Positions 40,714-60,331 of a stretch of DNA of 64,000 nt are shown here, one piece after another (the stretch's first letter is position 1; the number at the start of each line of letters is the position of its first letter). Position numbers and translations under genes: made by a program. The DNA is taken from assembly GCF_009834535.1 (NCBI RefSeq), contig NC_045701.1, positions 32,736,001-32,800,000 of the forward strand, in the 5' to 3' direction. The notes beneath the pieces were generated by a model. That model was not told the origin of the DNA. It ran no database searches and worked only from the letters and a program-made list of their open reading frames with translations. The DNA comes from Camelus ferus (taxonomy: Eukaryota).

Positions 40714-43366
40714 TTAGGCTACGACTTCCTTCAAGGCAGCCCCCAGCTCTGGGAAGGAATACTGGTAGCCAGCGGCCAGTGTCCGCCGCGGGACCACCTT
40801 CTGGCCCTCCAACAGCATGACAGCACGTTCTTGCCCAAAGACAGCTCGGACCACGGGGCTTGGGAGAGGGATGAAGGCTGGGCGGCCCAGGGCTGCGCCT
40901 AAGGCCCGGGCAAACTCAGCATTTGTCGTGGTGGAGGCTGGAGCCACTCCATTCAGGACCCCTTGCACGTGGCTTGCTTCAAGGGCATGGACCAGGATTC
41001 CTGTCAGGTCCTTGATGTGGATCCAGGGGAAGAACTGGTGGCCTGAGCCGATGGGGCCGCCCAGGCCCAGGCGGAAGGGCAGCAGCATGTGACTGATGGC
41101 ACCGCCCCCACGACCCAGCACAACCCCTACAGCAGGGGAAGGATGGTACAGGGTTCCTCTGTACTCGCCCTTCCTCACTCCTCCCCCATGCTGACTTGGC
41201 TCTATGGCAGGTGAGGGTTACGGCTCTCTGAGACATCCTGTCCTCCCATCTGCAGGTTAGCCAGAAGTGGTGGCATCCACTGTAAACTCAGTTCCCCTTA
41301 TCCCCCCTCCCCTACTTCCCTAGACCAGAGAAGAGACATTCCAACCCTGTTGGAAACCCGGGCCCCTGCTTCTTACCAGAGCGCACCACCACTTGGCGTG
41401 TGGAATCTCCAGGAAGCCTGGCTGCGGCTTCCCATTTGGTTACGAGGTTGGAGAAAAAGTCAAAATCCCCTCCTGGGCTGTCCTCATCATATTCAGCAGT
41501 CAGGCTGGGCTGGTAGTAAGCTGCGGGTGGAAGAGTACTTGTTTGCCTTGGGGTGTCCTTTGGTCCCACCTGGCCCTCTGTGGTCAAGGCTCCCCTGGCC
41601 TCACCCTCCTTGGCCCTTGGGATCTCCCCATGGGAAGATAGAGACATGGATACATTTCCCTTGAGCTTTTCCATGAGCTGACCTGTTCCTGCCCTGAAGT
41701 AATTCGTATCTCTCTTTACAGGGCTAAGCTGAGAGGCTGCTAGAGTGCAGAAGTTAAAAACAAAGACATGGGTGCCAGGCTGCCTGAGTATTGATCTCAG
41801 CGCCACCATTTCTCAACTCTGTGACTTTAGGCAAATTACACAACCTCTCTGTGCAGAATTTTTGCATCTTTTAAATGGGGATAATAGTATCTACCTCCTA
41901 AGTTTCTTGTGAGGATGAAATGTAATATGTACAAAACACTTAGAAGAGTGGCTGATATGTATACACGATAATTGTCTGCAATCATTTGGTCCCAAAGGTG
42001 AAATACAAGAATCAGGAGTTCTGTTCCTAAAGGACTGTGCTGTGAGAAAAAAGGGACTTGAGGGTAGGTGGGATTTCTTCTGGGGCTGGGAGCACTGTCA
42101 CTCCCCCCTCTTTCTCAGAGGGTCCCTGTTCCTCAATGACAGTACACAAAAGTCAGGAGAAGTATGCATGGATTGAGGGCCTGGGTAGTTCCTCTGCTTG
42201 GCAAAGACCAGGACTTTGGGGCCTGAGCCACCCCGTACTATGTACCCCCCTTTCCCTGGCTGGTCTAAAGGGTTGGTGATTTGGGGCATACCTACACCTG
42301 TGACTAAGACCCAGGCCTGGGGGGGTTGTGGGGCCTTGGCAATGGCTCTAGCCAGCATTTGGGTGGTCTCCAGGCGGCTGCTAAGAACTTCTTTTTGGAA
42401 AGCTTCATTCCACCTGCAGGAGAAACATAGGGGAAAATAAAACACTAACTACTTGCACACATTCTTCCCTCTCTTTCCCTGGGGCTCATCCATATCCATT
42501 TCTAGTAAAATATGCATTGTGGCTTAGACAAATGGTCTATTTCTCCTGTAGAGGGAAAAGGCACATCTATTTTGGGCATCCTGAGTTACAAGTGGGGACT
42601 AAGGTCCACTGGCTGAGTGTGAAGAAGGGCAGGTAAGTGTAGAGGAGCAGGGGTGGAGGGATAGCAGTCTGCGACATGGGTCCAGTTCTCAGTCTGGCAG
42701 CTCCATTCGCTGCAGCTCGCAGGTTCTGTCAGAGTCGGCCCTCTCCTCCCTCCGCTCTTAAGGTTATCAGCTTTAGAGCCTGGCTGACCTGCGGAGAGGG
42801 TTGAGGATGTTCTCTCCAGCCAGGTTGACGGCGGCATCGCAGCGGGGCAGCCCCGTCGTAGCAAGCTCATCCTGTGGGAGAAAGCACACAGTGCCCGCGA
42901 GCCACCCAACCAGGCCTTCCCCCCGGGGCTCCCAGAGTCTGGACATACCCACGTGATCCGATCGGGCCCTGGCTTTCGGGAGATCAAAGTCACTTTGTGG
43001 CCCCTGGCCTTCAGCAGCTGGGTTAGGGCTGTCCCAACGAAGCCCGTCCCGCCACCTGATCAGAAAATACAAGGTGTTTATCCTCCTGGGGGCGCCTTCC
43101 TTCCCGCACGGGGTGCCCTCTGGTGCCATCCCATCTAACTCCAGACTTCTCCCCTCCTTCTTGCCCCCTCCCCGCGATGCAGAGATGACACAGGTCACAG
43201 GGCTTAGGGAGATTCGCCTTCTCCGGCTTGGAGGCCAAGGCCAAGTTGCCTGTGCACGAGACGGAACGGCCTCCTAGCCGTTAGTCTCTGGCTAATAGCT
43301 TCCTTTTATAAACCTGCCTCCTCCCACGCCCCCTTTCTGCCCTCCCTCACCCACTAGAACCCGCAT
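40714..43366 (-). CDS. SDR39U1: SDR39U1 epimerase-family short-chain dehydrogenase. Exons 43366-43351, 43055-42949, 42871-42789, 42413-42292, 41520-41377, 41126-40714; 294 aa
   Basis: MRVLVGGGTGFVG Rossmann motif, DAAVNLAGENI, WNEAFQKEV, YYQPSLTAEYDEDSPGG and ...PELGAALKEVVA*. GT-AG junctions; 885 nt. Confidence 0.97.
41760..41975 (+). mobile_element. MIR SINE in SDR39U1 intron 4
   Basis: MIR core (tgtgactttaggcaaattacacaacctctctgtgc...aaatggggataatagtatctacctc). Confidence 0.7.
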
Positions 43367-43620
43367 AGCGACCACGACCTAACGCGCCTGCGCAAGGTTT
43401 AGAGTTTGCCTCCCCTAGAACGCGACTACGGCGTTTTTGCGCATGCGTCTTTAGGGAAGCGCGCTCAGGTGGCTGCGCGGGTAGGATTGAGACTGGGCGT
43501 GGCCTTGCCTGGCGACCCGGAAGAATTCTTGGAGAAGGCTGTGTATTTCATTGCAAGGAGTGGCGGGGACAAGGGCATGGGAGGCCGGGACAGGGAATAG
43601 ACCGAGGGGCGAGGAAGGAA
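43367..43620 (-). promoter_or_regulatory. SDR39U1: SDR39U1 CpG promoter with NRF1-type and ETS motifs
   Basis: GCGCCTGCGCA at 43384-43394, TGCGCATGCG at 43438-43447 and CCGGAAG at 43517-43523. Confidence 0.65.
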
Positions 43621-43829
43621 GGGGAGGAGGCGGAGTAGGGAAGGTTTGAGTGTGGGAAAAAACCTTTGACCTAAAACCCCAGGCTACTCCAACTGCCGAA
43701 TTCTGGATGTTCATTCTGCTTGGTGGCTCAGGAGTATAAGAAGATCCGTCCAGTGCTACGATAGGTTTCTTTCTACCCGGCCTGTTATTTTACCTTTTCT
43801 GCTTCCCGTTCTGGCTCCTTCCTGTCGGG

Positions 43830-44620
43830 ATCTACACGTTCTTAAGTTCCCCACGACTTAAAATAACCCTTTTCCAGTCCTCTTCCTCTGCTAATGTCCT
43901 TTCTTTCTCTTCATCTTCATAGCCAGACTTCTTAAAAGAGTAGTGTCCATTTTCTACTTCCATCAACTTCACATCCGTCCGGCTTCGCATTTATCAGGCA
44001 TTGCGTCTTTTGGCAACATCACCAATTTCCCACGTGTTACCAAAACTAATGCTTAGTTTTCAGTCATTTTTCTTGACCTCTGTATTACTGATGCTCGCTG
44101 ACTCCTTCCCTTTGGAAATGCTCATTTTGCAGCCTCAGTGAAAGCCACACTCTCTTTGGGTCTTTCACCCAGATTTCTTCAGTCTCTGTTGTTTGCTCTG
44201 CCTCTTCCAGTGTCTTAAAATGTTGATATTCCTCAAAGCTAGCTCCTAGGATTTTCCTTTCTTCCCATTCTGCACTTTCTCCCAAACATTTACGTCGGTG
44301 AATTCAGTTACCAGTTTTTTTCTTTTTCAGAGAAGACTTCCAAAATCTATGCAACTATAGGAGAGCCTCAGAGCTCCTGAATCCTATAAAAACTTCCCAC
44401 TAGATATCTCTTCCTGGATGTCTGAAACCCTATTGATTATACTTATTAATATCTCCCAGATCCATCTCTTTCTGTCTCTTTCTGCCACTACCACTCTTCT
44501 TCAAGTTATTATCCTCTTTTTGTCTACATTTCTGCAGTAGTCTCTTTGATTAGTCTCTCTGCTTCTGCATGTTTCTTCTCTCCAAACTCCACACACTGCA
44601 ATTCTGATTATTTGTTCAAG
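43830..44620 (+). mobile_element. L2 remnant
   Basis: CT-rich L2-like text (cccactagatatctcttcctggatgtctg). Confidence 0.5.
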
Positions 44621-45019
44621 ATGAATTGCTAGAGAGAGTTCACTTGATTGAAGGGATTCACCATACCCTTGGAAGCGAGGAGTGGTAGCAGCCTCAAGGT
44701 CCCGTTGTGTTTGTCCCTGTTCTGCCCTATCCTCTCCTCCAGTCAGTCCCTCAACTGATAAGAGTTGGGGCTGAGCAGACCCTAGGCCTTCAACTTCTTG
44801 CTGCTTTGGGAGCAGCCGTTTGTGGCTGACGTTCAGCAAGACTTGTGATGCTGTCCCGCTTCTTATCTGCTCCAGGTATCTGTCATGCAGAAGTGAGTGA
44901 GGGATGGTCTCCCCTGCATCTCAGATCAAAGCTCCACAGATGCAGATCTTCTCTTATCGAGGTGGACTGTCACAAGGGCCCAGTGCGGCCCCAACTGCCT
45001 CTCTAGCTCATGCATCCGA

Positions 45020-45200
45020 ACTGCTGGTTCTCAACTGAGGGTGATTCCTTCCCAGCTTCCTCACCCACCCCTCACACACCTCTGGGGGACATTTAGCAAT
45101 GCCTGGACGTGTTTTTGGTTCCTAACTTGGTGGTGGAGAGGGGGCTGTTGCTACCAGCGTCTAGTGGGGAGAGGTCAGGATGCTCTAAATACCCTACAAT
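45020..45200 (+). mobile_element. MER20 (hAT-Charlie) remnant; second copy inverted at about 49682-49862
   Basis: ggttctcaac...gggggacatttagcaatgcctggac...tttttggtt...ctagtggggagaggtcaggatgct matches MER20 as I recall it. Confidence 0.75.
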
Positions 45201-45666
45201 TCGAAATGTTCTTAGTGCTTTTGAATATCCCTAAAGGTAAATCACGATTGCTGTTGAGTTGATGGTGAGTCAAGGAAGGATCTGGTGTGATTTCTTGTTT
45301 AAGTTGGACATGAGGGTCCTGCCTCTCCAAGGAATCCCTTTCTCTTCTTTCTTTCCCTCTTTTTCTTCATTGTTTCCTCTCTGACTCTGACACACCGACT
45401 CCTTTCAAGGCTTTTAGAGCCTGATGCTGGGAGGAGAGAGCTGCAGAGGGAGGAGAGAGCTGCAGAGGGAGGAGACACAAACTCAAGTCTGGAAACTGGG
45501 TCTTTATGGAGACTGGGAATTCTGTGATCTGGAGGAACATTCTTGAGGCTTAGGGGTGTGGCAGGACTTCCACAGGAACCAGAGGCAGACCACCAAGAGT
45601 GAGTGGCACAGACAGCATGATCGGATCCAGCTCCAGATTTCCCCTCAGGCTGGCCCAGGCTCCAGG

Positions 45667-45809
45667 TTAATCCTCCTTCAGGACCTCATTGATCCAGGGC
45701 TGGTGATGGGAGATCCGGGTGAAGACAGCAGGGGGCTTTGCATGTGACCGTCCATAGGAGACAATGCCCTGGGCCACCCAGCACACAGAAGAGGGCCCCC
45801 TGAGTCTCC
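45667..45809 (-). pseudogene. CMA1: Isolated duplicate of chymase exon 5 (frameshifted)
   Basis: [11 protein letters not shown], then a 1-nt deletion, then [35 protein letters not shown]. Confidence 0.9.
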
Positions 45810-45954
45810 CTGTGGGACGGAGAGTGAGAGGGAGAGAGGGAGAAGGTGAGCCAGGGAAACCACCCACTCCTTCCCGTGGTCCCAACTCTGAGTTGGTCAG
45901 ACCTAGCATCAGATCCAGAGCCCGGTTCCTCATGGGGTGATATGTCTTGGTCTG

Positions 45955-46405
45955 ATTATAAAAGACTGAGACCTAATCATAAGACTATAGAGAAATTCCC
46001 TTTCCCCTACACCTCACCAGAACATTACTAAAAACCTATTTATAGCAGTTCCTTTTACTTAGTATATTTTGTCCAGCTATCAAGAAAAAAAAATTACAAG
46101 GTGTAGTAAAAGATAAAAAAACATAATTTTAAGAGACATAACAAGCATCAAAACCAGTTATGGCAGGGATATTGGAATTGCACACTGGGAGTTTAAAATA
46201 ACTATGATTAATACACTAAGGGCTCTAATGGATAAAGGAGACAGAGTGCAAGAACTGATGGGCAATGTAAGAAGAATAATGGAAATACTTAGAAAGAACC
46301 AGAAAGAAATGCTAATAATCAAAATACTGTAACAGAAATGAAGAATGCCTTTGATGAGCTCATTAGTAGATGGGATACAACCAAGGAAAGAAGTTCAGTG
46401 CTTAG
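45955..46405 (+). mobile_element. Old L1M 5'/ORF1 fragment
   Basis: A-rich L1M ORF1-like text (aactatgattaatacactaagggctctaatgg...gaaatgaagaatgcctttgatgagctcattagtaga). Confidence 0.7.
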
Positions 46406-46406
46406 G

Positions 46407-46680
46407 CTACTGACAAGGGATTAATATCCAAAATATGCANNNNNNNNNNNNNNNNNNNNNNNNNNNNNNNNNNNNNNNNNNNNNNNNNNNNNNNNNNNNN
46501 NNNNNNNNNNNNNNNNNNNNNNNNNNNNNNNNNNNNNNNNNNNNNNNNNNNNNNNNNNNNNNNNNNNNNNNNNNNNNNNNNNNNNNNNNNNNNNNNNNNN
46601 NNNNNNNNNNNNNNNNNNNCCATTATCAAAAAGTCTACAAATAAGAAATGCTGGAGAGTGTGTGGTGAAAAGGGAACCCA
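46407..46680 (+). mobile_element. Short internal L1 ORF2 3' fragment spanning a 180-N gap
   Basis: gacaagggattaatatccaaaata[N]cattatcaaaaagtctacaaataagaaatgctggagag...aaaagggaaccc. No poly(A) tail. Confidence 0.75.
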
Positions 46681-47154
46681 AGGGACAAGGAAGCCCACAC
46701 TGATTGAGGGAAAGCCAAGAGCAGGTGGGAGGAAGAGGGTGACTTCCTTTTATATAACGTGTGACACTGTGCTTAAAGTCCTATATTCTCTTCATCTTCT
46801 GGCCTTGTAATTTGGCTGATCTGTGTGTGCTCACAGGATACGGAGAAGGTCGAGATAGGAACCCAGAGGGCTTGTCCTGAACGGTGACAGAGGAGTGTAG
46901 GGCAGGGGCAGAATGGAGTGGCGGAAATCTGAGGTGAAAAATGACATATGGTATCTGAGGCCGTGTTGGCTGCTGTGTCTGGAGGAAGAATGAGAATTTG
47001 TGAGCAGGCTGTGAGGGGGGAAAGCAGATACCAGAGCCACCTGAGAGGGAAGATGGGCAGAACACAGGGCCAGGATGAACTGAAAGGCCTCTCCCAACTT
47101 CAACCCAGCCTGTGAATTTTCTATGTTCAGGCCCTGGGGTTCTCTGTTCCACAG

Positions 47155-49215
47155 GAGATCACTGGGGGCACAGGGTGCAAGCCACACTCCCGCCCCTACT
47201 TGGCCTACCTGGAAATTATCACCCCACCAGGGTAAGCTGGTGGCATGTGGTGGTTTCCCGGTGAGAAGGGACTTCGTGCTGACGGCTGCTCCATGTACAG
47301 GAAGGTGAGACATCAAGGTCTTTTCATCTCTAAACGGGAGGTAAACAGCCAGGGAAGAACCAGGGACACCACCTGGGGCCTGAGGAGGGGCTCCTGGACT
47401 TGAGTCTCTTTAAGGAGGGGCAAGACCTGGGCCTAAGGAAAGCAGTCTCATAATTGAAGAGCTGCCCTGACCCTCAGTCACTGTGAGCTCAGCTCCCCTA
47501 CAAAGGAAAGGAGGCCCCATCCCAGCATCCTCCTCTAAAAGTAGCTCCTCCTCCCTGACCCCAACACAGGAGACATGGACTCAGTCTTCAGGGTCCCATG
47601 CCGTTCGCTGGCCACTTCCTCTATGCCCTTTCCGAGAACACTGGCCTTTAGTTCCCAGGAACCTGAACTCACCATTTCCATCAGAGGCCAAGAACAGAGT
47701 CCACCTGAGATCCCACCACTTCCCCCTTACCTCTGATACCTCTAGCTCAGAGGGCTGGCCCTCACTAGGGATCCCTGATTAGGAAGTGCCAACCCAGTCC
47801 CCTAGGTCCTCCGTGGCCTGTTCAGTCCCCAGAAGGTCCCAAGAGTCCTGGAAATTGTCTCTGTTCCTTGGGAAAGCTCTTTCCTGAGTAAAACCTGAGT
47901 CCCTCAAATACCAAAAGTGACCAAGGAAAAGGGAGAGGGGTGGGTAGAGACCATTGACCCCAGGAGAGACTTCATACCCTTTTCTCAAAATGGGTATATC
48001 TCAGGGAGAACCCAAACCATCACTGTTTCTCTTTGTCCTTCTTCTCCCTCACAAAGGTCTATAATGGTCACCCTGGGAATTCATAACATAAAAAAGAAAG
48101 AAGACACATGGCAGAAGCTTGAGGTCATAAAGCAGTTCCCTCACTCAAATTATAACGACTCTATTGCTCACCATGACATCATGTTACTGAAGGTGCAAAT
48201 TCTTCTTCCCCTTCTCCCCTTCCTGTTCCCTAGGGCTTCCTTCTCCCCTTCCTGCTGTCTAGGCTGCTTCTTCAGGTTCCATTGCTCTGACACTTCCCCA
48301 ACCTGACTCTCCCACAACTCCCCCCTCTGGAAGTGGCTGTAATGGGGAGCAACTTGCCCCGTCCTTCCCTGATTGCCTCCAACTGCTCCCAAACCCACTT
48401 CTAGCACTGACACGCTCATCCCCTTTACAGCCGGGGGAGAAAGCCAACCTGACCCTGCCGTGGGGATGCTCCCCCTTCCACCCCAATTCAGCTTCCTCCC
48501 ACCCGGGGCAGTGTGCCTGTGCTGGGCGGCTGGCTGGGGAGGAACCTGAGCAGAGGGATGGGGCTGCAACACTCCGCGAGGGGTGAAGCTGAGAGTCCTG
48601 GAGCCCCGGGCCTGCAGACTCTTCACTACTTTTGACCACGGCCTCCAGTTGTGTGTGGGCAGACCCCGGAAGACAAAATCTGCATTTAAGGTGATCCTCA
48701 GACCAAGGTCTTCTCCACAAATCACTGTTCAGGGTCCATACATCTCCGGGAAGGAGATGGAGTCAGAAATTTGTCAGCGGTGACAAAGTTTGAGATCGTA
48801 GGACTGAGGAGCTAGAATTTTCCCTCTGCCGACTGTCCTTCCACAGCCCCAGGCAGTCTCTGAGCATCCTTCCCAGGCTGGGGCACAGAAGTCATGGGGT
48901 GTCATGAAGGAGAGGAAGAAGCAGAATCAGACTGAGATATATCACCCCATGAGGAACCGGGCTCTGGATCTGATGCTAGGTCTGACCAACTCAGAGTTGG
49001 GACCACGGGAAGGAGTGGGTGGTTTCCCTGGCTCACCTTCTCCCTCTCTCCCTCTCACTCTCCGTCCCACAGGGAGACTCAGGGGGCCCTCTTCTGTGTG
49101 CTGGGTGGCCCAGGGCATTGTCTCCTATGGACGGTCACATGCAAAGCCCCCTGCTGTCTTCACCCGGATCTCCCATCACCAGCCCTGGATCAATGAGGTC
49201 CTGAAGGAGGATTAA
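47155..49215 (+). pseudogene. CMA1: Chymase (CMA1-like) pseudogene. Exons 47155-47304, 48057-48192, 48431-48690, 49073-49215; exon 1 not found
   Basis: Chymase peptides [27 protein letters not shown] and [11 protein letters not shown]. Frameshifts in exons 2, 4 and 5; IIGG reads ITGG; catalytic His motif reads TAAPC. Confidence 0.92.
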
Positions 49216-50075
49216 CCTGGAGCCTGGGCCAGCCTGAGGGGAAATCTGGAGCTGGATCCGATCATGCTGTCTGTGCCACTCACTCTTGGTGGTCTGCCTC
49301 TGGTTCCTGTGGAAGTCCTGCCACACCCCTAAGCCTCAAGAATGTTCCTCCAGATCACAGAATTCCCAGTCTCCATAAAGACCCAGTTTCCAGACTTGAG
49401 TTTGTGTCTCCTCCCTCTGCAGCTCTCTCCTCCCTCTGCAGCTCTCTCCTCCCAGCATCAGGCTCTAAAAGCCTTGAAAGGAGTCGGTGTGTCAGAGTCA
49501 GAGAGGAAACAATGAAGAAAAAGAGGGAAAGAAAGAAGAGAAAGGGATTCCTTGGAGAGGCAGGACCCTCATGTCCAACTTAAACAAGAAATCACACCAG
49601 ATCCTTCCTTGACTCACCATCAACTCAACAGCAATCGTGATTTACCTTTAGGGATATTCAAAAGCACTAAGAACATTTCGAATTGTAGGGTATTTAGAGC
49701 ATCCTGACCTCTCCCCACTAGACGCTGGTAGCAACAGCCCCCTCTCCACCACCAAGTTAGGAACCAAAAACATGTCCAGGCATTGCTAAATGTCCCCCAG
49801 GGGTGTGTGAGGGGTGGGTGAGGAAGCTGGGAAGGAATCACCCTCAGTTGAGAACCGGCAGTTCGGATGCATGAGCTAGAGAGGCAGTTGGGGCCGCACT
49901 GGGCCCTTGTGACAGTCCACCTCGATAAGAGAAGATCTGCATCTGTGGAGCTTTGATCTGAGATGCAGGGGAGACCATCCCTCACTCACTTCTGCATGAC
50001 AGATACCTGGAGCAGATAAGAAGCGGGACAGCATCACAAGTCTTGCTGAACGTCAGCCACAAACGGCTGCTCCCA
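48925..50075 (+). repeat. Inverted repeat copy B (~1.15 kb)
   Basis: Near-identical to the reverse complement of 44807-45957. Confidence 0.97.
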
Positions 50076-50616
50076 CACCACACAAGTCTGTGTACCCTCA
50101 ACGTGCTCAAGACTAGTGCAGTGGCACAAAGAAGAGAGGGGTCAGTCCTGCTCAGGACAGGAGGACAATAGCTCTGACTCCTGAGCCCAGGGGTGGAATA
50201 GCCATTGAAGCACAGCAGGGAGCCTGCCTTAGCGGTTCTAATTGATTACTGGTTGCTGTGAGAGAAAACTTGACTTGCTTAAGGGCTCATCCTCCGCGCT
50301 GAGTGTCAGCCCCACCCACCTGCTTCCCTGTCCTTAAACAGCAGCCTGGAGCCACCATCCCACAGCACCTCCATAGGGAGAGGATCAGGGACCTGGGGGA
50401 GGAGAAGGAGCTGCCACCCGGGGTGAAGTGAAGCAGTGACAATGTCCAGGGTCAGGGCTTGGCAGCCAAGGGGTCCATGGGAGCCAGCCCTGCCCTCTGA
50501 CCTCCTACGTAGAGGCTATGCAAGGTGGGGCCTCCCCCGACAGGGGGCCTGGGAGGGCAGGGAAGGTGGGACCAGGAGGAGAGCGGGCTCAGTCCTTTCC
50601 CTCCCTCTGCCCTCAG

Positions 50617-50793
50617 GGGGACTCCGGGGGCCCTCTCGTGTGTGACAATGTGGCCCAGGGCATTGTCTCCTATGGACAAAAAGATGGGTCCACTCCACGG
50701 GCCTGCACCAAAGTCTCAAGTTTCCTGCCCTGGATAAAGAAAACCATGAAAAGTCTCCAACTGCAAGAACCGGGCCATCTTCCCTGGAGCTGA
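50617..50793 (+). pseudogene. GZMB: Orphan granzyme B-like exon 5, with part of intron 4 (50076-50616) and poly(A) signal at 50829-50834
   Basis: [20 protein letters not shown]...[22 protein letters not shown] with Arg226. The 3'UTR resembles GZMB. No exons 1-4 upstream. Confidence 0.8.
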
Positions 50794-51889
50794 TCTAGAA
50801 TCACACTGGGTTGGGGGGCCAGCAACGGAATAAAGCCTCTTAGCTGAGCAGGAAGAGTTGGTTTCTTGTTTATTTGTTGACCCCCATTCACAGGCACCAG
50901 CTCTGTGCTTCGAAAGCCAATGACACTGTTCTGCTGGTTTCTGCTTCCTCCTCTTCCCCCTCCCACCATCACTTCCCCTAAACCCCGTGCAAAGCTATAC
51001 CCAGGTCCCCCACACCTGGCTTTCCAGGGCCTGCCCTTCTGCCAGGGCTGAAGCTGAGTACCATCAGGAGAAGACAGGAACCTCTCTGGTCCTGGGGCCA
51101 GAGTGCCTTACCTCCTTGCCCTGTGTCCTATGGCAGAGAGGAGGGGATGACACCACGGGTCCCGGACACCAGGCAGGCACAGTCTGGGGCTGCCACTCAA
51201 GGACGGAGCCCCCACCGGGGAGGGAGGGGCCTTCCTGAGCAGACATTTCTCTCCCACAGCCCGGGAAGCAGGCCCAGGGCAGGGGTGGATCTCCTGAGAA
51301 GTTCCTCCTTCTCAGCTGGGCAGAATGTCCTTCCTGTCCTCATCCGAGCTCTTGTTTGCTGTGGCTCTCCAGCCTGAATCACTACTGACAATGTGCTTTT
51401 TCTTTAGCTATAATTTTGTTGCTTTTTAAGAGACTTGCAATCAAGATGTTTAGAACTAACAATAATTTCACCTCCATGGCTCTCTCCTCCTTTTCCATTA
51501 CGGGGACATGATCAGGATAACTTGTTTAGCAAATAGTACAGGGATATTAGAAGTGCAATTCTCTGCACAGTGGTGTGGGAATTCTACTTGGCTCCCTGGC
51601 ATCCTTTCCCACTTCACGTGGTATCAGTAACTCATCAAAGAGAATAACTTTCGGGAGAGCCGTTCTTCTTCCACTCTCAGTATATGTGGATTGGACAGAG
51701 CAGACCCCAGCCTAGTCAAAGGCTCTGACTAGGCTGAGGTAGAGCAGAGGTTTCAAGCGCCCTGACCACAGGCACCTGCAGCACCGAGGTAGGCTGTGCT
51801 CTGCGGGGACTGCCACTGTCTGTCTCCACCCCACAGGTTCCTCGTACATGACTGCATCGCTCCTCCCGCTGGGAGGTGGGGTCTGTAGC

Positions 51890-52325
51890 CCTTCTTTTTT
51901 AATCTGGTGGGAGCACTCGATCGTCCAAGATGGAATATGGTAGAATAGAGGCCATATGACTTCAAAATCTAGGTAATAAAAACAACACAGCTTCTGCCCG
52001 GCTTGCTCTGTAGGAGATACTCACTCTGAGGAAGCCAACCACCATGCTGGCAGAGAACCAAACAACTGAGACTACTCGAGAGGCCCTCATGGAGAGAAAC
52101 CAACGTGCTCAGTGAGCGAAACCAACGTGCTCAGTGAGCAGCCAGCACCAAGCACTGGGTGTGTGTGAGCGAGCCCTCAGGTGGTTCCAGCTTCCAGGCT
52201 TCAAGCCACCTTGACAGCAAGGGTAGCACAGGGGAGACATCCACGCTGCACCCTGACCAAAATGCAGACTCCTGGGTAAAAGCAATGTCGTTCTTTCAAA
52301 CCACTCAGTTCTTTAGTAATTAAAA
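51890..52325 (+). mobile_element. Old MLT1G/H-like LTR containing a perfect 22-bp tandem duplication (52096-52139)
   Basis: MLT1-type motifs; gaaaccaacgtgctcagtgagc occurs twice in tandem. Confidence 0.55.
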
Positions 52326-52816
52326 CATTACTCCACACCATTCTGTCCATCCCTCTAACCGTGGCCTTCACCACCCTCGTCTGATCACTGATGGTTTTGT
52401 CTCCTCCCCTAGAAGCGAGGATTCTCATCTCCAGTGTCCCCCACAGTCTCCCACAAAAGGGGCCTCAATAAAGAATTACCCTGGTGATCTATAGTAAACT
52501 ACAGAAATGACGACGTTCTTTGATCTATTATCATAAGACCCAGGTTGCTAGGGTGGGGGACCAGCTGTTGGCGGATACAACATCTCCAACCACCCTTTAC
52601 TTGTAGCTTCATTTCCTGTTTTCTGCTGCTGCAGCTGGCACCAAGCCAAGAGCTACTGGTGCTCTGACAAGTTCATACTCCACTCAGACCCAGGGACTTG
52701 ATCAAAAAGCAGTGTGAGGATTTCGGAGAAGCCTTGTAGGATGGAGGCCACAACATCGGAGGAGACACTTAAGATTAAAACACTGGAAGGAAGAACTGGG
52801 CAGCCTTTGTGGAGAG

Positions 52817-54753
52817 CTGCTCCTGCTTCTGCTCCTGGCAGCCCATCCTCTGTCCGCCACCGGGGACGCAGGTGAGTGACTGTCCCCACCCGCAGAGGCC
52901 CAGGCCCATCCCACACTGGCACACACCTGCTGAGACACTACGCTCATACGCATCCTGGATGGTCTACCTGCTGAAGCTTTCTGGACTGTGCCCAACTCCC
53001 TCAGAGACCAGCAAATCTGACCCCATCTGCCTGCTCCAGCCGAATGCTCCACGAGCACACAGGCAGGCTGGGATGTTTCTTTTAGGGAAAATCATCAGGG
53101 GCTATGAGGCCGAGCCGCATTCTCGTCCCTACATGGCATTTCTTCAGATCCAGACTTCAGGGAACATTATACTCTGTGGCGGTTTTCTGGTGCGTGAGGA
53201 CTTCGTGCTGACAGCAGCTCACTGCTGGGGCAGGTGAGGAGCAGCGCCTGGGCCCCCGCCCCTCTGTCAGCGCCTCACAGGGAGCCCTCTTCTCAGGGGC
53301 CGCAGGCCTGGGCCACCTAGTAACACTGACGAGCTCTTCGGAGGACAGCTAGGCTTTGAGGAGAGAGGGACAGATCAATGCGAGTGGCCTGCGGAGAAAG
53401 GAACTGCCCAAAGCTGGGATGGAAGGAAGCCAAGGTTAAGCCCTGGAGCCCAGAGTGCAAATGTGAGACAGATGCACGGACTGGCTTACAGGCAGGCGGG
53501 CTCTGTGAGAACTCAGCATCCCAAGTGCCCTCCAGGAACTGCCGCCCAGCCCGGGCTGCCCGCAAGCGGACAGAACCGAGATGCTCTGCCCCAGGGCCCC
53601 ACTGCCTAGAATTCTCTCCGCTCCAGTCCTGCCCTGTCCCGAGCCTGTGACTCCACCTCCCTCTCTCTCTCTCTCTGTGCAGCTCAATCAGCATCACCCT
53701 GGGGGCCCACAACATCCTCGAGCAGGAGGGGACCCAGCAGGTCATCCGGGTGAGAAGAGCCATCCCCCACCCAGATGATGATGATGAAAACACGGCCAAC
53801 GACGTCACGTTACTGCAGGCGGGGCGCGCGGCTGCACCGGTTCTCACACACTTTAACCCCAGGGCTTTGCATCCCCCATCACCTCACTCCTGTCCCTCCT
53901 TCCGGTACGACCCCTTCAATTATCCCAGAGCTGTGAAGAAAGCAACCCTACGACTGTCCCTGCAGTCTTTGTGGGCCATGGGTAGGTTAGAATGCCTTTC
54001 CTCTGCCTTCAGCTGACGAGGAAGGCCAACCTGACCACCGCTGTGAGCCCCATCCGGCTGCCCCAGGGGAAGGAGCCGGTGAAGCCAGGGATGGTGTGCA
54101 GTGTGGCCGGATGGGGGCTTCTTGGCGTGAACAAACCTGCAGCAGCAAAACTGCAGGAGGCAGAGCTTGAAGTCCAAACAGACCAGCAATGCATCCATCA
54201 CTACAAACATTACGATGCCACCACCCAGATATGTGCAGGGAACCGAAGAAACAGGGAGAATTGTTTTGAGGTGAGATCCCCAGCGTTATCCAGGCAAAGC
54301 CCTGGGCACATCCCTGGCAGTGGGAACTAGCCGTATCTCCACGTCTGCAACATTTCCTCCTATCCAGTCTCTGGTCCTGTCTCCCTGGGGGATGGGAGAT
54401 TGTCCCACACATATGGGCAGAGACTTCCTAGGGGAGGAGAACGGGGGATGAACAAGGCTGGGCTGAAACCTCAGGAGCCAAAACCTTCATATCAGCCACG
54501 GCCCCCTAACAGAGACCACCCACCCCCTGGGCGGCAGGGAGGGTCAGACCACAAGATGACCCAGCTCACTCCTTCCCCTCTCTGTCCACAGGGAGACTCT
54601 GGAGGCCCCTTACTGTGTAACAGTGTGGCCCAGGGCATTGTCTCCTTTGGAACCAAGGATGGTACACCTCCAAGTGTCTATACCAGAATCTCGAGCTTTC
54701 TGTACTGGATACAAAACACAATGAGAATCTGTGAACTTCAGGGACCAGACTGA
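52817..54753 (+). pseudogene. Duodenase-like chymase-locus serine protease, probably disabled. Exons 52817-52871, 53086-53233, 53683-53818, 54013-54270, 54592-54753
   Basis: GK propeptide, Asn189 and LTRKA...VYTRISSFL closely resemble bovine duodenase as recalled. His, Asp and Ser of the triad are present and frames are open, but ATG is replaced by CTG and the exon 3 donor is GCGGGG. AATAAA at 54845-54850. Confidence 0.75.
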
Positions 54754-56656
54754 GGTGCCCCGGGATGGATCTGTCCATCTTCTCTGGGGCAGAGGCCAGA
54801 ACGGCATTGGGCCAAGGGGATGGAGGGGAGGCTGCCAGGGATGTAATAAACTGTCATCTTCAGAAGTCATTGATTCCTCCTTTATTCATCCACACAGATT
54901 CGTTAGGTAACAAGAGTGTCTGGCAACCCTCTGTTCAATTTTCCGGCCTGTCCCTGGCTTCCCCCTCCAGCAGACCCCTCCTTCCAACTCTGGAATAAAA
55001 ATCCTGTTGCAGTGACAGCCAGCGCCCTCCGATCACACGTCCCCAGTGTCAGCTTCCCGGCCAGGCTGCCTGTGAGTCCATCAGAACACGGAGACATCTC
55101 CTCAGGAAAACTGACCCTCATCTAGAGGACGCTCCCGCCTCCTCCCTCGTCCCCACCCCCACCGCACCCCAACATTCCAGGGCCACATGGCAACGTAAGA
55201 GGATCCAGATTTCAAAGGAGGATCCCCTGAGACGCGCTGGGGTGGGGGTGGGGGGACTTCTCCACCCGAACAGAAATGGAAGAGGGGAGGCTTTGAAAGA
55301 GTGTAGCTCACCCCTGCAGAACTTCCTCCCACATCAGAGTAGCCAGAGCTCAGAAGCCTGAGAACGTTTCAGGAGCGCCTCAGAGTTCCCAGGCCCAGCC
55401 CCGGGGCCTGGCCCAGCTCCGGCTTGGAGTCTTGGGCCCAGGGCCCAGTGCAGCCTCGGGTGTCCGGACAGCTCAGCCTCCTGCAGCCCCAGTTGAGCTG
55501 CAGGGCGCTCTCCCATCTTGGTCTGAGCCAGCCTCNNNNNNNNNNNNNNNNNNNNNNNNNNNNNNNNNNNNNNNNNNNNNNNNNNNNNNNNNNNNNNNNN
55601 NNNNNNNNNNNNNNNNNNNNNNNNNNNNNNNNNNNNNNNNNNNNNNNNNNNNNNNNNNNNNNNNNNNNNNNNNNNNNNNNNNNNNNNNNNAGGAAACTCA
55701 TTGTAATGAAAAGTATTGGTCTCAGGGGTTTCCTAATGTTTCAAAGGTGTCTAACAGCCTACAGCATACTGAGCAAACTTTTTCTTCTACTTTTCAACAT
55801 CTCTTAATTTTTTTATATAAGATTGTTCAGGAAAGTGAACTTTTTCAAAAACCATGCACCTGAGAGAAGGCTCGGCTGAGGAGGAGAGGCTTACTGAATG
55901 TTTGCATTGGTCAGTGAGTCTCACTAAGGGAAAACGCATTTTGGGTATAGAAGTAACACATGCTCATCACAGAAAGACACTTAAATACAGAACATATAAA
56001 TAAGAAAATAAAAATTACTGGGAATTCTACCACCCCGAAGTCATCATCACGAATGCTTAAGTGTCTTTCCTTCCACTCTTTGTCTACTGACTCGTAAGCG
56101 GCTGTTCTGTCGGCATTGGAATTGGGCTATTTAGAACTCCTCGTGCCTTCCTTTCCCTTTCTCTTCTGGCCCCACGGGGGTGAGAGTGTGGGGAAGCACG
56201 CAAGAGGTCAGGATCGCCACGGACAAGGGCATCAGAGACACGGGTCTCTGGACACTGGACAGAGAACACTCAGTGCAGAGTAACTATTAGGATGAACGGC
56301 ATCCGGGTCTGATTTCATCTGAATGGAAAAGAACCAAGAGTGGGGACATGGGGACACTCTTGATTCATGATGGAGCCGACTCTGGGGGTCCAGCCCCTCT
56401 GCTGGCCGCACCTCAGACTTCACTCTCTTGTGCTTGCTTCTTGTTTTCACCTTGTGACTCAGCAGTGGGAGGGCAAGTGTGGTGACAGCGCCCTTCTCAC
56501 CCAGCCCAAGGCAGGGACCAGGGACCCCCACGTTGCTGGCTGACATCCGGCCCAGGAGTCTGTGCCGGGCTGAGCCTCCCCTCCTCCGGTCCCCTGGGCT
56601 TTGTGTCTGGAAGGAAGGAAGACCAGCAGCTCAACCTGCGCAGACTTTCAGGGAAG

Positions 56657-59598
56657 ATGCAGCCACTCCTGCTCGTGATGGCCGTTCTTCTGCCCGCCGG
56701 GCGGGGACAGGTGAGTGACAATCCCCATTCCTCGGGCCTGGGTCCATCTCACTAAGCCCCCTGTTCTCCTGACCCTCCTGCCCAGCTCCAATTTCTGAAC
56801 CCCAGCTCCAGGCCCAAACCCAGACAAACAAGTTCGATGCCGCCCAGACATTCACATGGGCGGATGGCAGGAAGGAAGGGTGCTCACTGGAAGCTTTAGC
56901 AGGGCACAGCCCCTCTCTCTCTCTCTCTCACACCGGGAAAGTGGGTTGTGCATTTGGCAGAGGATGTGAAGCTACAAAAACCAAGTAAGTAAAACCCCTC
57001 ACTCCAACCCGGGAAAGGGCAGCTCAGCCGAAGTCACTGCAGGCTGGGAGTGGTCAGTGGACCCAGCTCAAGGACCGGTGAAGTCTCTCAGGGCCCCCCA
57101 CCCCTCGGTCCTGCCCAGGACAGGAGCCCAGGGTGCGATGGATCAGAAGTGGCAGGATGGCAGCACCCAAAGCTCTCCGGGTGCTAAGCTCTGCCCCGGC
57201 CCCACACAGCCCACTTCCAGTCCCACCTCCCCTGCCTCCCAGGCCCTCAGTGGCCCCAGTGCCTTTGGCAGTGCCCTCCCCACCCCTGTGCCCTTGAATC
57301 CACCAGCGCCGTCCCTGCCAAACTTCAGCCAAAAGCCAACTGGAGGCTATCACTCATGCAGCCAGAGTGTTCACTGCAACCCTAGGGTGTGTTAGGCCCT
57401 AGGACACGAGGATTTCAGAGAATCCCACTCCGTAAGCTCGTAGGAAGATTATTAGAAAAGGACACCTATCAATCTGCTAACAGAGGCTCAGAGTAGTCAG
57501 GGAGACCCGCAGGGAGCGAAGGCTCATCAGGGAGTCCTGTCCACCATTCTCCGGGGCTCCACCACGTTGAAGGCAGACCTTGCCCCCGCCACGAACGTGT
57601 CTGAAGCAGGACGTGAAGGACAAGCTGACCCCCTTTCTCCGAGGGGGAGTCTGAGGCTTGAGGTTAGAAAATGTTACTCTGTTGCAAAGAGAACCTGGAG
57701 GACTCTCCCCTGGGGTCTGCAGGGCTCTGTGGACACACCTCAAACGCCACCTTCCTGATTTTCGCTCCTGACCACAGCCGCCCCCGTCACCCTGTCTCCC
57801 AGCCCTCTCTTTCAGGGGAGATCATCGGGGGCCACGAGGCCAAGCCCCACTCCCGCCCCTACATGGCGTTCGTTCAGTTTCTGGATCAGGAGAGGATGAG
57901 GCGGTGTGGCGGTGTCCTCGTGCAGAAGGACTTTGTTCTGACGGCTGCTCACTGCAGGGGAAGGTGAGGGGCAGCAGCCAGCCTTCCCCTGCTGACACCC
58001 CCGCAGGGACCCCATCCTCTGCCGGGGGGCCGAGCCCAGGGAGGGCCCGCAGCTTCTCATAACACAAGACCGAGAGAGCTCATCAGACGACCATCTGACG
58101 GCAGGACTAAGGTGATGAGAAGCTGAGAAACAGGGCAGTAAGTTTCGAGGTCCGGGGATCAGAGGTGAGAGCAACACGCATAGGTGAGAAGGCGGGGACC
58201 CGACCGGCCAAAAGCAGCATCAGTGAGGAAGAAAGCACGCATTGAAGTCAAAGTGCAAACTCAGAGAAATTTCACGATACTGCTGAGAAAGCTCCATCAT
58301 GTCCCTGCCTTCATGTCATTGAGAAGCACACGGCAGGGCGTCACTCCGCCCCAGGACCTTCTGTGGCCTCAATTTCCCCTCAGCTGCAGCCCTGCTCTGC
58401 CCCCGTGTCACCAACCCCGCACGGCTCTGGGGCTGGCCCTCCTGTGACACCACACTCCCCACACGCTCTCTGCTCTCTGTGCAGCTCAATCAATGTCACC
58501 CTGGGGGCCCACAACATCAAGAAGCAGGAGGGGACCCAGCAGGTGGTCCCAGTGAGAAGAGCCATCCCCCACCCAGACTATAATCCTAAGGACCACTCCA
58601 GTGACATCATGTTACTGCAGGTAAGGAACCTCCCCGCTTCTCTGCCCTCCTGGAAACACACTGTCTCCCCTCCCACTGCAACCAGTCCCTTTCCTCCCTC
58701 CCGTCCTGGCCGCCCGACCTGTCCCCGGGGCTCAGGTGAGAGCGAGGGCTCTGCGGTCTCACTGCAGTGTCCCGGCCCGGAGGCCACTGGCTGAGCTGGA
58801 CCCTGTCTCTCCCCATCAGCTGCAGAGAAAGGCCAAGCAGACGGCAGCTGTGAGGCCCCTCAGGCTGCCCGGGGACCGGGCCCGGGTGAAGCCAGGACAG
58901 GCGTGCGGTGTGGCCGGCTGGGGGCAGGTGGCGGTGGGCGTTCCAGCCACCACTCTGCAGGAGGCAGTGCTGACGGTGCAGGAAGATCGTGTGTGCGAAT
59001 CCCTCTTCCCAGGCTATTACAGCCGCGCCACCCAGATTTGTGTGGGGGACCCGAGCACGGTGAAGACCAGCTTCAAGGTCAGGTTTCCAGCATCTAGGCA
59101 CACAGGCCCCGGGGAGCAGAACTCAGGGAAGGTCTGGGGCTGGGGAGAGGCCATCTTCATTCCTCAGCCCGAGGGCTTGGGCAGCCTGGTCCATGAGTCC
59201 ACACTTTAGACATTTTTCCTGAGTGGGTCAGGGTGGAGGGGGCGGAAGGATCAGTCATGTGGCAGCTGTGTTATCAGCAGAGTTTCCATGAGGACTGAGA
59301 AGAAAGGTTGGCCTGGGTCTCAGTAAAGACCAGTTAGAGCCAGACGGGAGCCCTGGGACCCTGCCCTGGTCCCTGACAGACAGCACCCAGCCCCAGGCTC
59401 CAGGGAGGGCGGGCCCCGCTGAGGACCCTCAGTCCTTCCTCTCTCTGCCCACAGGGCGACTCCGGAGGGCCCCTCGTGTGCAAAAACCTGGTCCAGGGCA
59501 TTTTCTCCTGTGGGAAACAGAACGGGACACCTCCAGGAGTCTTCACCAAGGTCTCCCACTTCCTGCCCTGGATAAAGAGAACAATGAAGCGCCTCTAA
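56657..59598 (+). CDS. GZMH: Granzyme H. Exons 56657-56710, 57816-57963, 58485-58620, 58820-59077, 59455-59598; exon 1 is 1 nt short (frameshift as written)
   Basis: MQPLLLV..., [57 protein letters not shown]. Triad intact; T189/G216/G226. AATAAA at 59694-59699. Confidence 0.85.
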
Positions 59599-59871
59599 CA
59601 GCAAGCTGGAGACTCACCTTTTTGTGGGCTGGCCATCTTCCTGGGGCAGCGGCAAGAATCCCATAGGGGTTGGCAGTGGGATCGCAGGGCCATAATAAAG
59701 GGATCTCTAGAGCAAAGATGACTGAATTCCTGTTTATTCAGCGACCACTTCTGATATGCAACAGCCCTGCCCCAGGCAGCCCTCTGCTGCCAGCTCGGGG
59801 TTCTGCTTCTGCCTTTCTCCCCAGGCCTCGCTCCGCCCTAAATCCCATGCTGTCTGTCTAGAGTCTCATTG

Positions 59872-60331
59872 TGTTACTGAATGCAAGCTCCTGTGCCCGA
59901 CGCACCGTGAGTCCAAACAAACTAAAACGTTGGAGTTTGGAGCGGAGAAAGGTTTGTTGCAGGGCCGAGCCAAGAGAACCCGTGGCTCATGTCCCTCAAA
60001 TCCCAAACTCCCCAAAGGCTTTCAGCTGAGCCTTTTTAAAGGCTCGCTGAGGGTGGGGCGGCCCAGGGTGTGTGCTCAGCTGTGCACAGTCCTCTGATTA
60101 GTTGATGGTGGTTGATCCTTAGATGCCAGGTCTGTGTGCTACTTACGCTTGATCATCAAGTGGTTAATTTCTTCAATCTGGTGGTGGTTTTGAGCATCTG
60201 AAAAACTCAGGAAATATGCAGGAGATACTATTATCTGGGTACTTCAGAGAGGAGCTCCAGCAGAGCCTATGGGGGAGGGGTCTGCCCCCCCCCACCCCCG
60301 GGAAGGCCCCATGGGATCCTTCTGGGTTACA
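59872..60331 (-). mobile_element. ERV1-type solo LTR (460 bp)
   Basis: TGTTAC...GGTTACA inverted termini with 4-bp flanks attg/gttg. Confidence 0.75.

What the first reader, a model, noticed from the sequence alone, without database searches (positions are those of the whole stretch)
44807..50075. 1.15-kb inverted repeats, each carrying chymase exon 5, bracket exons 2-4: inversion scar or invertible cassette
Seen: 44807-45957 is the reverse complement of 48925-50075. By eye I find three internal mismatches (45025/49857, 45081/49801, 45109/49773) and three more in the inner ~20 bp. Each repeat contains the intron-4 end, exon 5 and 3' flank. Copy A continues outward into L2-type flank towards SDR39U1, copy B continues inward into intron 4 and exon 4, and the outer end of copy B joins GZMB-like intron 4. 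Inference: this is the pattern of a staggered-break inversion. Recombination between the repeats would flip the ~3 kb spacer so that exons 2-4 join copy A on the minus strand, the orientation CMA1 has in human. The alternative is a false haplotype duplication in the assembly.
Basis: partly seen in the sequence, partly recalled or inferred. Interest (0 to 1): 0.75.

Follow-up and report, generated by a model that had tools for sequence, protein, structure and literature searches.

The report
Inverted repeat around dead camel chymase
Two near-identical 1.15-kb copies of the tail of a dead camel chymase gene face each other across a 3-kb spacer; it is most likely a real rearrangement scar, not a working genetic switch.

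Summary

The gap at 46440-46619 lies in L1-derived DNA about 530 bp upstream of chymase exon 2. It does not lie in any protease exon. Its two flanks fit one L1 ORF2 fragment on the same strand.

The chymase copy is a pseudogene:
- no exon 1 was found;
- exon 2 has a frameshift;
- the catalytic His codon reads Pro;
- exon 4 has an in-frame stop;
- both exon 5 copies carry the same 1-nt frameshift.
So no spacer orientation can yield an enzyme.

Short-read contigs from public camel runs contain three of the four junctions: L|arm, arm|L1 and intron 4|arm. All five contigs stop exactly at the arm's outer boundary. The arm therefore has two outer neighbours in every sample, as a true duplication would.

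Two contigs cross the inner boundary without a break, which the window's structure does not predict. The arm|R junction could not be recovered.

Verdict: probably a real, recent or conversion-homogenised inverted duplication left by a complex rearrangement (about 0.6). An assembly or haplotype mosaic remains possible (about 0.25). A functional invertible cassette is very unlikely. Interest is low to moderate. The scan noted further palindromes just beyond this window (s1-149126, s1-149710).

The parts
42950..43059 (-). SDR39U1 first coding exon found (GGGTGF Rossmann motif). The last exon is at about 40717-41120. This is the left neighbour gene.
   Evidence: Six-frame motifs and open frames; sequence. 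Read-based contigs L004-L006 run from arm A into these exons.
43100..44806 (.). L flank: 1.7 kb between SDR39U1 and arm A. Junction J1 is 44806|44807.
   Evidence: Four Logan contigs from four runs start exactly at 44836 (30 nt inside the arm, k-1 for k=31) and run left through this flank at 99.5-99.85% identity.
44807..45957 (-). Arm A of the inverted repeat: chymase 3' flank, exon 5 copy and the last 147 nt of intron 4.
   Evidence: Logan contig L003 covers 44807 to 45957 and continues past it.
45667..45810 (-). Chymase exon 5, copy A, with a 1-nt frameshift after [11 protein letters not shown] (at about 45777).
   Evidence: The same frameshift is present in L003 (no indel there).
45958..46439 (+). 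Spacer, left part: 35 nt of unassigned sequence, then L1-like sequence (ORF1-like, then a jump to an ORF2-like KGLIS motif at 46415). Junction J2 is 45957|45958.
   Evidence: Sequence; motif. The L1 ORF1 assignment rests on my own knowledge only; Pfam, Atlas and PDB gave nothing. J2 is crossed by L003.
46440..46619 (.). Assembly gap (180 N) inside the L1-derived piece. It lies outside all protease exons.
   Evidence: Its flanks are in one L1 ORF2 frame, 69 codons apart as written. The letters were not looked up.
46620..46680 (+). L1 ORF2 fragment (matches ORF2p residues 1121-1139) that ends abruptly with no L1 3' end or poly-A.
   Evidence: PDB sequence search: the top four hits are all LINE-1 ORF2p, E 0.003-0.02.
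46681..47153 (+). Sequence upstream of exon 2 (presumed remnant of intron 1). No exon 1 or signal peptide was found.
   Evidence: Three-frame translation; sequence.
47154..47306 (+). Chymase exon 2: ITGG instead of IIGG, a frameshift near 47222-47230, and the catalytic His codon replaced by CCA (Pro) at 47291-47293.
48057..48192 (+). Chymase exon 3 (contains DIMLL, so Asp102 is kept).
   Evidence: Pfam Trypsin E 3.4e-07.
48431..48690 (+). Chymase exon 4 with an in-frame stop at 48547-48549.
   Evidence: The stop is also present in the independent contig L001.
48925..50075 (+). Arm B of the inverted repeat. Inner junction J3 is 48924|48925 (uninterrupted intron 4). Outer junction J4 is 50075|50076.
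   Evidence: Logan contig L001 equals window 48478-50075, crosses J3 and ends on the last base of the arm.
49072..49215 (+). Chymase exon 5, copy B, with the same 1-nt frameshift (at 49105).
50076..50607 (+). R flank beyond arm B. It resembles paralogous intron 4 only from 50548 onward.
50608..50790 (+). Lone granzyme B-type exon 5 with no exons 1-4 upstream.
   Evidence: 98.3% identical to C. bactrianus granzyme B residues 205-263; Pfam Trypsin E 7e-11.
51485..51485 (.). Left limit of colinearity with the dromedary locus L007. Everything to the left (both arms, the chymase pseudogene, the granzyme B exon 5 piece) is absent from the 8.5 kb upstream in L007.

Best explanation
This is a genuine small palindrome (1151-bp arms, 2967-bp spacer) at the SDR39U1 edge of the camel chymase locus. 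It is a scar of a complex rearrangement that flipped a 3.4-kb chymase fragment lacking its promoter and exon 1.

Shown:
- The repeat and its boundaries.
- The chymase copy is a pseudogene with several lesions.
- The exon 5 frameshift is the same in both arms, so it predates the duplication.
- Junctions L|arm, arm|L1 and intron 4|arm exist in independent camel read sets.
- A k-mer fork sits exactly at the arm's outer boundary in every sample seen.

Inferred:
- An already dead chymase gene lay on the minus strand next to SDR39U1, as in human.
- A break-and-rejoin or template-switch event inverted the segment from intron 1 to the 3' flank and kept a second copy of its last 1151 bp in the old position. 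This could be the staggered breaks of Ranz et al. 2007 or a replication-based inverted duplication.
- The event captured a doubly truncated L1 piece as filler at the arm A junction.
- The inverted copy was joined to a granzyme B 3' fragment.

Arm divergence is 0.26-0.5%. The window differs from dromedary by about 0.5-0.75% in neighbouring DNA. This makes the event recent (about 1-4 million years), or older with arm-to-arm gene conversion.

The structure has no coding function. Its only likely activity is passive: homologous recombination between the arms could flip the spacer or exchange sequence.
For: - Repeat and mismatches.
- Pseudogene lesions. The exon 4 stop and exon 5 frameshift recur in independent contigs L001 and L003.
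- J3: L001 (SRR35890888) equals window 48478-50075 and ends on the last arm base.
- J2: L003 (SRR36380802) spans 44807 to past 45957, carries arm-A alleles at 45944/45948/45949 and ends on the first arm base.
- J1: a partial ORF that I predicted would start 30 nt inside the arm is on record in four contigs from four runs. The three shown begin exactly at 44836 and run into SDR39U1.
- All five contigs break at the outer boundary. Under an allelic polymorphism every animal would have to be heterozygous.
- Gap flanks are colinear in one L1 ORF2 frame, which supports the scaffold join between the two arms.
- At the inner junction, 11 of 14 bases match before homology ends. That fits a microhomology-type breakpoint.
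Against: - The arms lie on two contigs joined across a gap, and no long read was seen.
- If both inner junctions coexist in one genome, k=31 contigs should break at 45943/48939. L001 passes along J3 and L003 along J2 without a break.
- J4 (arm|R) was never recovered.
- The three internal 'arm-specific' differences do not travel with their junctions in other samples. L001 is J3-linked but has arm-A alleles at all three. L003 is J2-linked but has the arm-B allele at 45081.
- L003 matches the window for only 35 nt beyond J2, then drops to about 76% identity.
- The dromedary locus L007 shows none of this region upstream of its CTSG-like pseudogene.
- No outgroup was available to show which junctions are ancestral.
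Confidence: 0.6

Rival explanations
1. Assembly or haplotype mosaic. Each junction is real somewhere, but the window strings together two structural haplotypes (or mis-joins two contigs). Under this reading no single chromosome carries the repeat exactly as written. The true structure could be one arm per haplotype, longer arms, or a different spacer.
For: - Arm A ends 482 nt before a gap, and the arms are on different contigs.
- L001 and L003 cross the inner boundary unbranched, each by a different route.
- The window and L003 disagree from 35 nt past J2 up to the contig end.
- Arm-specific SNPs are not stable across samples, and two of the three are CpG transitions.
- Published camel assemblies disagree on GZMB/GZMH copy number at this locus (PMC7924851). 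The rat chymase locus changed greatly between assemblies (PMC8537139).
- C. ferus carries three identical GZMH-like models, and dromedary carries two CTSG-GZMH fusion models.
Against: - All five independent contigs fork exactly at the outer boundary, which a simple two-allele polymorphism would show only in heterozygotes.
- The gap flanks are adjacent parts of one L1 ORF2 frame in the same orientation, which is unlikely for a random mis-join.
- J1, J2 and J3 are all present in reads.
Confidence: 0.25
2. An older palindrome kept nearly identical by arm-to-arm gene conversion. It would be structurally polymorphic among camels, with a spacer that flips by recombination between the arms and inner boundaries that shift. 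It would be a small autosomal analogue of the sex-chromosome palindromes.
For: - 99.5% arm identity.
- The 45081 C allele is found on arm B in the window and on a J2-linked arm in SRR36380802.
- Inner-boundary behaviour differs between samples.
- Other scan notes describe palindromes and a flipped spacer a few kb further on (s1-149126, s1-149710; unchecked).
Against: - One shared non-CpG site is weak evidence.
- Contig alleles may be bubble-popping mixtures of the two arms.
- Flipping cannot be seen with 31-mers, because it leaves all four junction sequences unchanged.
- No cross-species conservation of the arms was shown, and the dromedary locus fetched lacks them.
Confidence: 0.15
3. A functional invertible cassette. 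Flipping the spacer would switch chymase exons 2-4 between two exon 5 copies to turn the gene on or off or to change its product.
For: Only the geometry: inverted repeats bracket exons 2-4, and each arm carries an exon 5.
Against: - Both exon 5 copies are identical in coding sequence and share the frameshift.
- Exon 2 is frameshifted and has lost the catalytic His.
- Exon 4 has a stop.
- No exon 1 or promoter was found.
- No recombinase or short recombination sites are involved, and mammals are not known to use such switches for germline genes.
Confidence: 0.02

Closest known systems
Inverted duplications at inversion breakpoints (staggered-break model; Ranz et al. 2007, PMC1885836)
   Same: Unique, non-repetitive sequence (here a gene's 3' end) is present twice in inverted orientation. 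One copy sits in the old flank and the other at the far end of the flipped segment. As in that study, the duplicated gene pieces are non-functional.
   Different: The arms here are 99.5% identical, against about 88% on average in that study. A doubly truncated L1 piece fills one junction. The other end abuts another gene fragment. Neighbouring genes need additional events. No outgroup arrangement was available to show the un-inverted state.
Replication-based inverted duplications with microhomology and filler DNA (FoSTeS/MMBIR-type events in human genomic disorders; from my own knowledge, not checked here)
   Same: An inverted duplicated segment, imperfect microhomology at the inner junction (11 of 14 bases), clustered base differences next to the breakpoints, and a short templated-looking insert from a repeat element.
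   Different: The mechanism cannot be read from one sequence. These events are known as recent human copy-number variants, not as a fixed feature of a species.
[quoted passage not shown]
   Same: Near-identical inverted arms around a unique spacer. Recombination between the arms can homogenise them and flip the spacer.
   Different: Those arms are at least 8 kb (often tens to hundreds of kb), more than 99.9% identical, carry intact expressed genes and are conserved between species. These arms are autosomal, 1.15 kb long and carry a dead exon.
Alpha-chymase pseudogene in rabbit (PMC8537139)
   Same: A mammal in which the normally conserved CMA1 gene is inactivated inside an otherwise active chymase locus that has been rearranged at one end.
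   Different: Camels are not covered in that survey. I did not show that camels lack an intact chymase elsewhere.

Membership tests
Functional alpha-chymase (CMA1) gene | Five exons with an open reading frame from signal peptide to stop | tested here: not met
   No exon 1 in the 473 nt upstream of exon 2. Frameshift in exon 2, stop in exon 4 (48547-48549), and frameshift in exon 5 in both copies.
Functional alpha-chymase (CMA1) gene | Catalytic triad His57, Asp102, Ser195 | tested here: not met
   TAAPC instead of TAAHC (CCA at 47291-47293). DIMLL and GDSGGP are retained.
Inversion with breakpoint inverted duplication (staggered breaks) | Two inverted copies of otherwise unique sequence, one outside and one at the far end of the inverted segment | tested here: met
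   Arm A is contiguous with the SDR39U1-side flank. Arm B is contiguous with intron 4 and exon 4 of the + strand gene fragment.
Inversion with breakpoint inverted duplication (staggered breaks) | The sequence is single-copy and the segment is in the opposite orientation in an outgroup or ancestral arrangement | tested here: inconclusive
   The only other assembly reached (dromedary L007) loses colinearity at 51485 and shows no chymase sequence in 8.5 kb upstream. It may be a second copy of the unit. Look-ups were exhausted.
Inversion with breakpoint inverted duplication (staggered breaks) | Clean rejoining: the spacer's far end was originally next to the sequence now beyond arm B | not testable with these tools
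   This needs the ancestral arrangement. The L1 filler and the lone granzyme B exon 5 suggest more than one event.
Gene-conversion-maintained palindrome | Arms more than 99% identical around a unique spacer | tested here: met
   1145 of 1151 bases identical, with a 2967-nt spacer.
Gene-conversion-maintained palindrome | Arms older than their divergence suggests (present in sister species), with variants shared between arms | tested here: inconclusive
   One variant (45081) is seen on both arm types in different samples. The species of the Logan runs are unknown. The arms were not found in the dromedary locus fetched.
Assembly artefact (false duplication or chimeric join) | Junctions absent from independent read data | tested here: not met
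   J1 occurs in four runs, J2 in one and J3 in one. J4 was not recovered.
Assembly artefact (false duplication or chimeric join) | Half read depth on each copy and no read containing both copies | not testable with these tools
   No read-level access. Indirect: the outer k-mer fork in all samples argues for two copies, while the unbranched inner boundary in two contigs argues against the exact structure.
Programmed invertible DNA switch | A dedicated recombinase with short recombination sites, and two orientations that give different functional outputs | tested here: not met
   Both orientations join broken exons to an identical broken exon 5. The arms are 1.15 kb of gene sequence, not short sites.

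The most novel reading that the evidence does not exclude
The repeat is a recombinationally active mini-palindrome that differs in structure between individual camels: spacer orientation, arm length and an L1-bearing inner junction. It would be one of several palindromes that make the camel chymase locus unusually unstable. The puzzling contig pattern (outer fork in all samples, different unbranched inner routes in two samples) would then reflect real structural alleles.
Probability: 0.2. Interest if true: 0.45.

Novelty: new member of a known kind. Interest (0 to 1): 0.27.

Why it matters
The repeat itself matters little, because it brackets a dead gene and cannot switch anything. It is useful in three ways.

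1. It marks the proximal breakpoint of the rearrangements that reshaped the camel chymase locus. It therefore helps in deciding which gene copies in camel assemblies are real, a problem already raised for GZMB and GZMH (PMC7924851).
2. It shows that the chymase copy next to SDR39U1 is a pseudogene with lesions shared by independent animals. If camels have no other chymase, they would join the rabbit as rare mammals without a functional alpha-chymase.
3. A 1.15-kb inverted repeat at 99.5% identity is a substrate for recurrent inversion, so genotyping and assembly at this locus need arm-spanning reads.

Tried and rejected
Look-ups and searches that found nothing:
- Exact-product look-ups were not on record for the J2-spanning ORF, the full J1 ORF, R-flank ORFs, the predicted J4 edge ORF, the predicted inner-fork edge ORF and dromedary KAB1278056.
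- A protein search with the exon 5 ORF returned no camelid ORFs (best 64% identity). The search database evidently lacks the recent camel runs.
- An exact 33-mer across J4 is absent from JGI metagenome contigs.

L1 identification:
- Pfam, the Atlas and PDB did not recognise the L1 ORF1-like left flank of the gap. Only the right flank was confirmed as L1 ORF2.
- No other L1 copy in the window or L007 covers the gap flanks.

Anchoring on other camel assemblies:
- I could not anchor on SDR39U1. The longest open frame (167 aa) caps candidates at 292 aa, just below the expected protein length.

Ideas rejected:
- The arms are two insertions of one mobile element. They are gene sequence: intron, exon and 3' flank.
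- A fold-back read artefact. That would duplicate the spacer too.
- The exon 5 frameshift is a homopolymer error of the assembly. It is present in two short-read contigs.
- One inversion of a human-like locus explains the gene order. The order of chymase, granzyme B exon 5, CTSG-like and GZMH-like, all on the + strand, does not fit.

Gap letters:
- L007 also spans the position of the 55.5-kb gap. Only alignment coordinates were used, and no gap letters were read or reported.


Full report
**Observation.** The inverted repeat is real in the window.
- The repeat finder on 43000-52000 returns a single inverted pair, 44802-45957 / 48925-50080, with 2967 nt between the arms.
- Pairing the bases one by one gives a solid 1151-bp repeat, 44807-45957 against 48925-50075.
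- It has three internal mismatches (45025/49857, 45081/49801, 45109/49773) and three within the inner 14 bases (45944, 45948, 45949).
- Beyond both ends, complementarity drops to the chance level.
- A self-BLAST of the window shows no other near-identical repeat in 42-64 kb.
- A repeat of this length and identity cannot arise by chance. It is gene sequence, not an interspersed element.

**The gap.** N runs lie at 1041-1196, 46440-46619 and 55536-55690.
- The arms therefore sit on two different contigs. Arm A ends 482 nt before the gap.
- The gap is about 530 nt upstream of chymase exon 2 and inside no protease exon, so reading frame is not at stake for the gene.
- The right flank (46622-46681) matches LINE-1 ORF2p residues 1121-1139. 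The top four PDB hits are all ORF2p, E 0.003-0.02.
- The last bases of the left flank encode a KGLIS motif. I recognise it, from memory only, as lying about 70 codons upstream in ORF2p.
- The two motifs are on the same strand and, as written, in the same frame, 69 codons apart.
- The flanks thus look like adjacent parts of one L1 fragment and agree with the 180-N estimate. This supports the scaffold join but is not read-level proof.
- I did not look up the missing letters.

**What the pieces are.**
- SDR39U1 lies on the minus strand at about 40.7-43.1 kb, only 1.7 kb from arm A.
- Each arm holds about 860 bp of chymase 3' flank, exon 5 and the last 147 nt of intron 4.
- Between the arms, reading left to right:
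  - 35 nt of unassigned sequence;
  - an L1-like piece that is internally deleted and cut off at ORF2p residue ~1140, without a 3' end (45958-46680, containing the gap);
  - 473 nt with no recognisable exon 1;
  - chymase exons 2, 3 and 4 on the + strand.
- The gene is a pseudogene:
  - exon 2 reads ITGG for IIGG, is frameshifted near 47222-47230, and has Pro (CCA, 47291-47293) in place of the catalytic His;
  - exon 4 has an in-frame stop at 48547-48549;
  - exon 5 has lost one G after [11 protein letters not shown] in both arms.
- Beyond arm B come 530 nt of flank and a lone exon 5 that is 98% identical to C. bactrianus granzyme B. After that come a CTSG-like gene and a GZMH-like gene, all on the + strand.

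**Independent read-based evidence.** Logan contigs are k=31 assemblies of single public sequencing runs and can be found by exact ORF product.
- *J3.* The ORF across J3 retrieved L001 (SRR35890888, 1598 bp). It equals window 48478-50075. It crosses intron 4 into the arm without a break and ends on the last base of the arm. It keeps the exon 4 stop and the exon 5 frameshift.
- *J2.* The arm-A version of the exon 5 ORF retrieved L003 (SRR36380802, 1411 bp). It runs from exactly 44807 through the arm, carries arm-A alleles at 45944/45948/45949 and crosses J2.
- *J1.* If a fork exists at the outer boundary, the flank contig should end 30 nt inside the arm, and its edge ORF should start at 44836. 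That predicted 111-residue product is on record in four contigs from four runs. Three were shown: SRR34793922, SRR36380800 and SRR36380801. Each starts at 44836 and runs 2.2-3.3 kb into SDR39U1 at 99.5-99.85% identity.
- So J1, J2 and J3 are present in reads. In all five contigs the graph forks at precisely the base where the two arms stop being alike.
- An allelic polymorphism would need every animal to be heterozygous. A duplication explains the fork directly.

**What does not fit.**
- A genome holding both J2 and J3 should also fork at 45943/48939. L001 passes along J3 and L003 along J2 without a break.
- J4 itself was never recovered.
- The three internal differences are not stable arm markers. 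L001 (J3-linked) has arm-A alleles at all three. L003 (J2-linked) has the arm-B allele at 45081. Two of the three are CpG transitions.
- L003 agrees with the window for only 35 nt beyond J2 and is then about 76% identical, like a different L1 copy. The window's contig ends 447 nt further on.
- These points leave room for structural differences between animals, or for an imperfect assembly near the gap.

**Other assemblies and literature.**
- The genome is a camel (scan note s1-149030).
- Exon 2 of the GZMH-like gene is 100% identical to a C. ferus model.
- A dromedary fusion model (KAB1278060) gave locus L007 from CamDro3.
  - L007 is colinear with window 51485-64000 at 98.7-99.3%.
  - Its 8.5 kb upstream shares nothing with the window.
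  - Dromedary has two such fusion models and C. ferus has three identical GZMH-like genes. L007 may therefore be a second copy of the unit rather than the orthologue.
- Futas et al. 2021 (PMC7924851) report that camel assemblies disagree on GZMB/GZMH copy number and suspect technical causes.
- The Hellman group's survey (PMC8537139) does not include camels. It records a Cma1 pseudogene in rabbit and large changes between rat assemblies.

**Interpretation.**
- The most likely reading (about 0.6) is a real inverted duplication left by a complex rearrangement of an already dead chymase gene.
- The segment from intron 1 to the 3' flank now lies on the + strand. A second copy of its last 1151 bp remains in the human-like position and orientation next to SDR39U1.
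- This is the signature that Ranz et al. 2007 (PMC1885836) attribute to staggered breaks.
- The imperfect microhomology, the clustered differences at the junctions and the L1 filler would equally suit a replication-based template switch. That comparison is from my own knowledge.
- Arm divergence (0.26-0.5%), set against about 0.5-0.75% between the window and dromedary, suggests an age of roughly 1-4 million years, or an older event with gene conversion.
- One inversion of a human-like locus does not reproduce the gene order seen, so more than one event is needed.
- A functional invertible cassette is excluded for practical purposes. Either orientation joins broken exons to the same broken exon 5.
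- Recombination between the arms could still flip the spacer. Flipping leaves all four junction sequences unchanged, so only arm-spanning reads can detect it.

**Verdict.** Observation confirmed. Interpretation partly supported: a scar, not a cassette. The artefact alternative is weakened but not excluded. This is a new member of a known kind, of low to moderate interest.

Noticed in passing
window 47154-49215 and 45667-45810: The chymase copy next to SDR39U1 has at least four disabling lesions. Two of them (the exon 4 stop and the exon 5 frameshift) are confirmed in independent read contigs. If camels have no other chymase, they lack a protease that is conserved in nearly all mammals. I did not search for an intact copy.
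   Followed up: partly
window 50608-50790: A lone granzyme B-type exon 5 (98% identical to C. bactrianus GZMB) with no upstream exons sits 530 nt beyond arm B.
   Followed up: partly
window 52718-54750: The CTSG-like gene has no ATG in front of its signal-peptide-like exon 1 (the frame reads ...[21 protein letters not shown]) and has IIRG for IIGG at the mature N-terminus. Its other exons look open. Dromedary GenBank models KAB1278054 and KAB1278060 fuse its exons to the next GZMH-like gene.
   Followed up: partly
window 51485; L007 8549: There is a sharp end of colinearity between this camel and dromedary CamDro3 (CM016632.2, about 34.04 Mb). There is no poly-A or obvious element end at the break.
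   Followed up: partly
window 45457-45475: A 19-bp stretch of arm A is absent from contig L003 (SRR36380802). This is an indel polymorphism or an arm difference in that animal.
   Followed up: no
window 43040-43075 (minus strand): The SDR39U1 exon carrying GGGTGF is preceded by a pyrimidine tract and CAG, with an in-frame TGA just upstream. The camel start codon may therefore lie in a separate upstream exon, unlike the human MRVLVGGGTGF start that I recall.
   Followed up: no
window 56600-59595: The GZMH-like gene here matches annotated camel GZMH models at 100% in exon 2 but only 85-94% in exons 3-4. It matches dromedary KAB1278056/054/060 at 96-98%. It appears to be a distinct paralogue that RefSeq does not model as such.
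   Followed up: no
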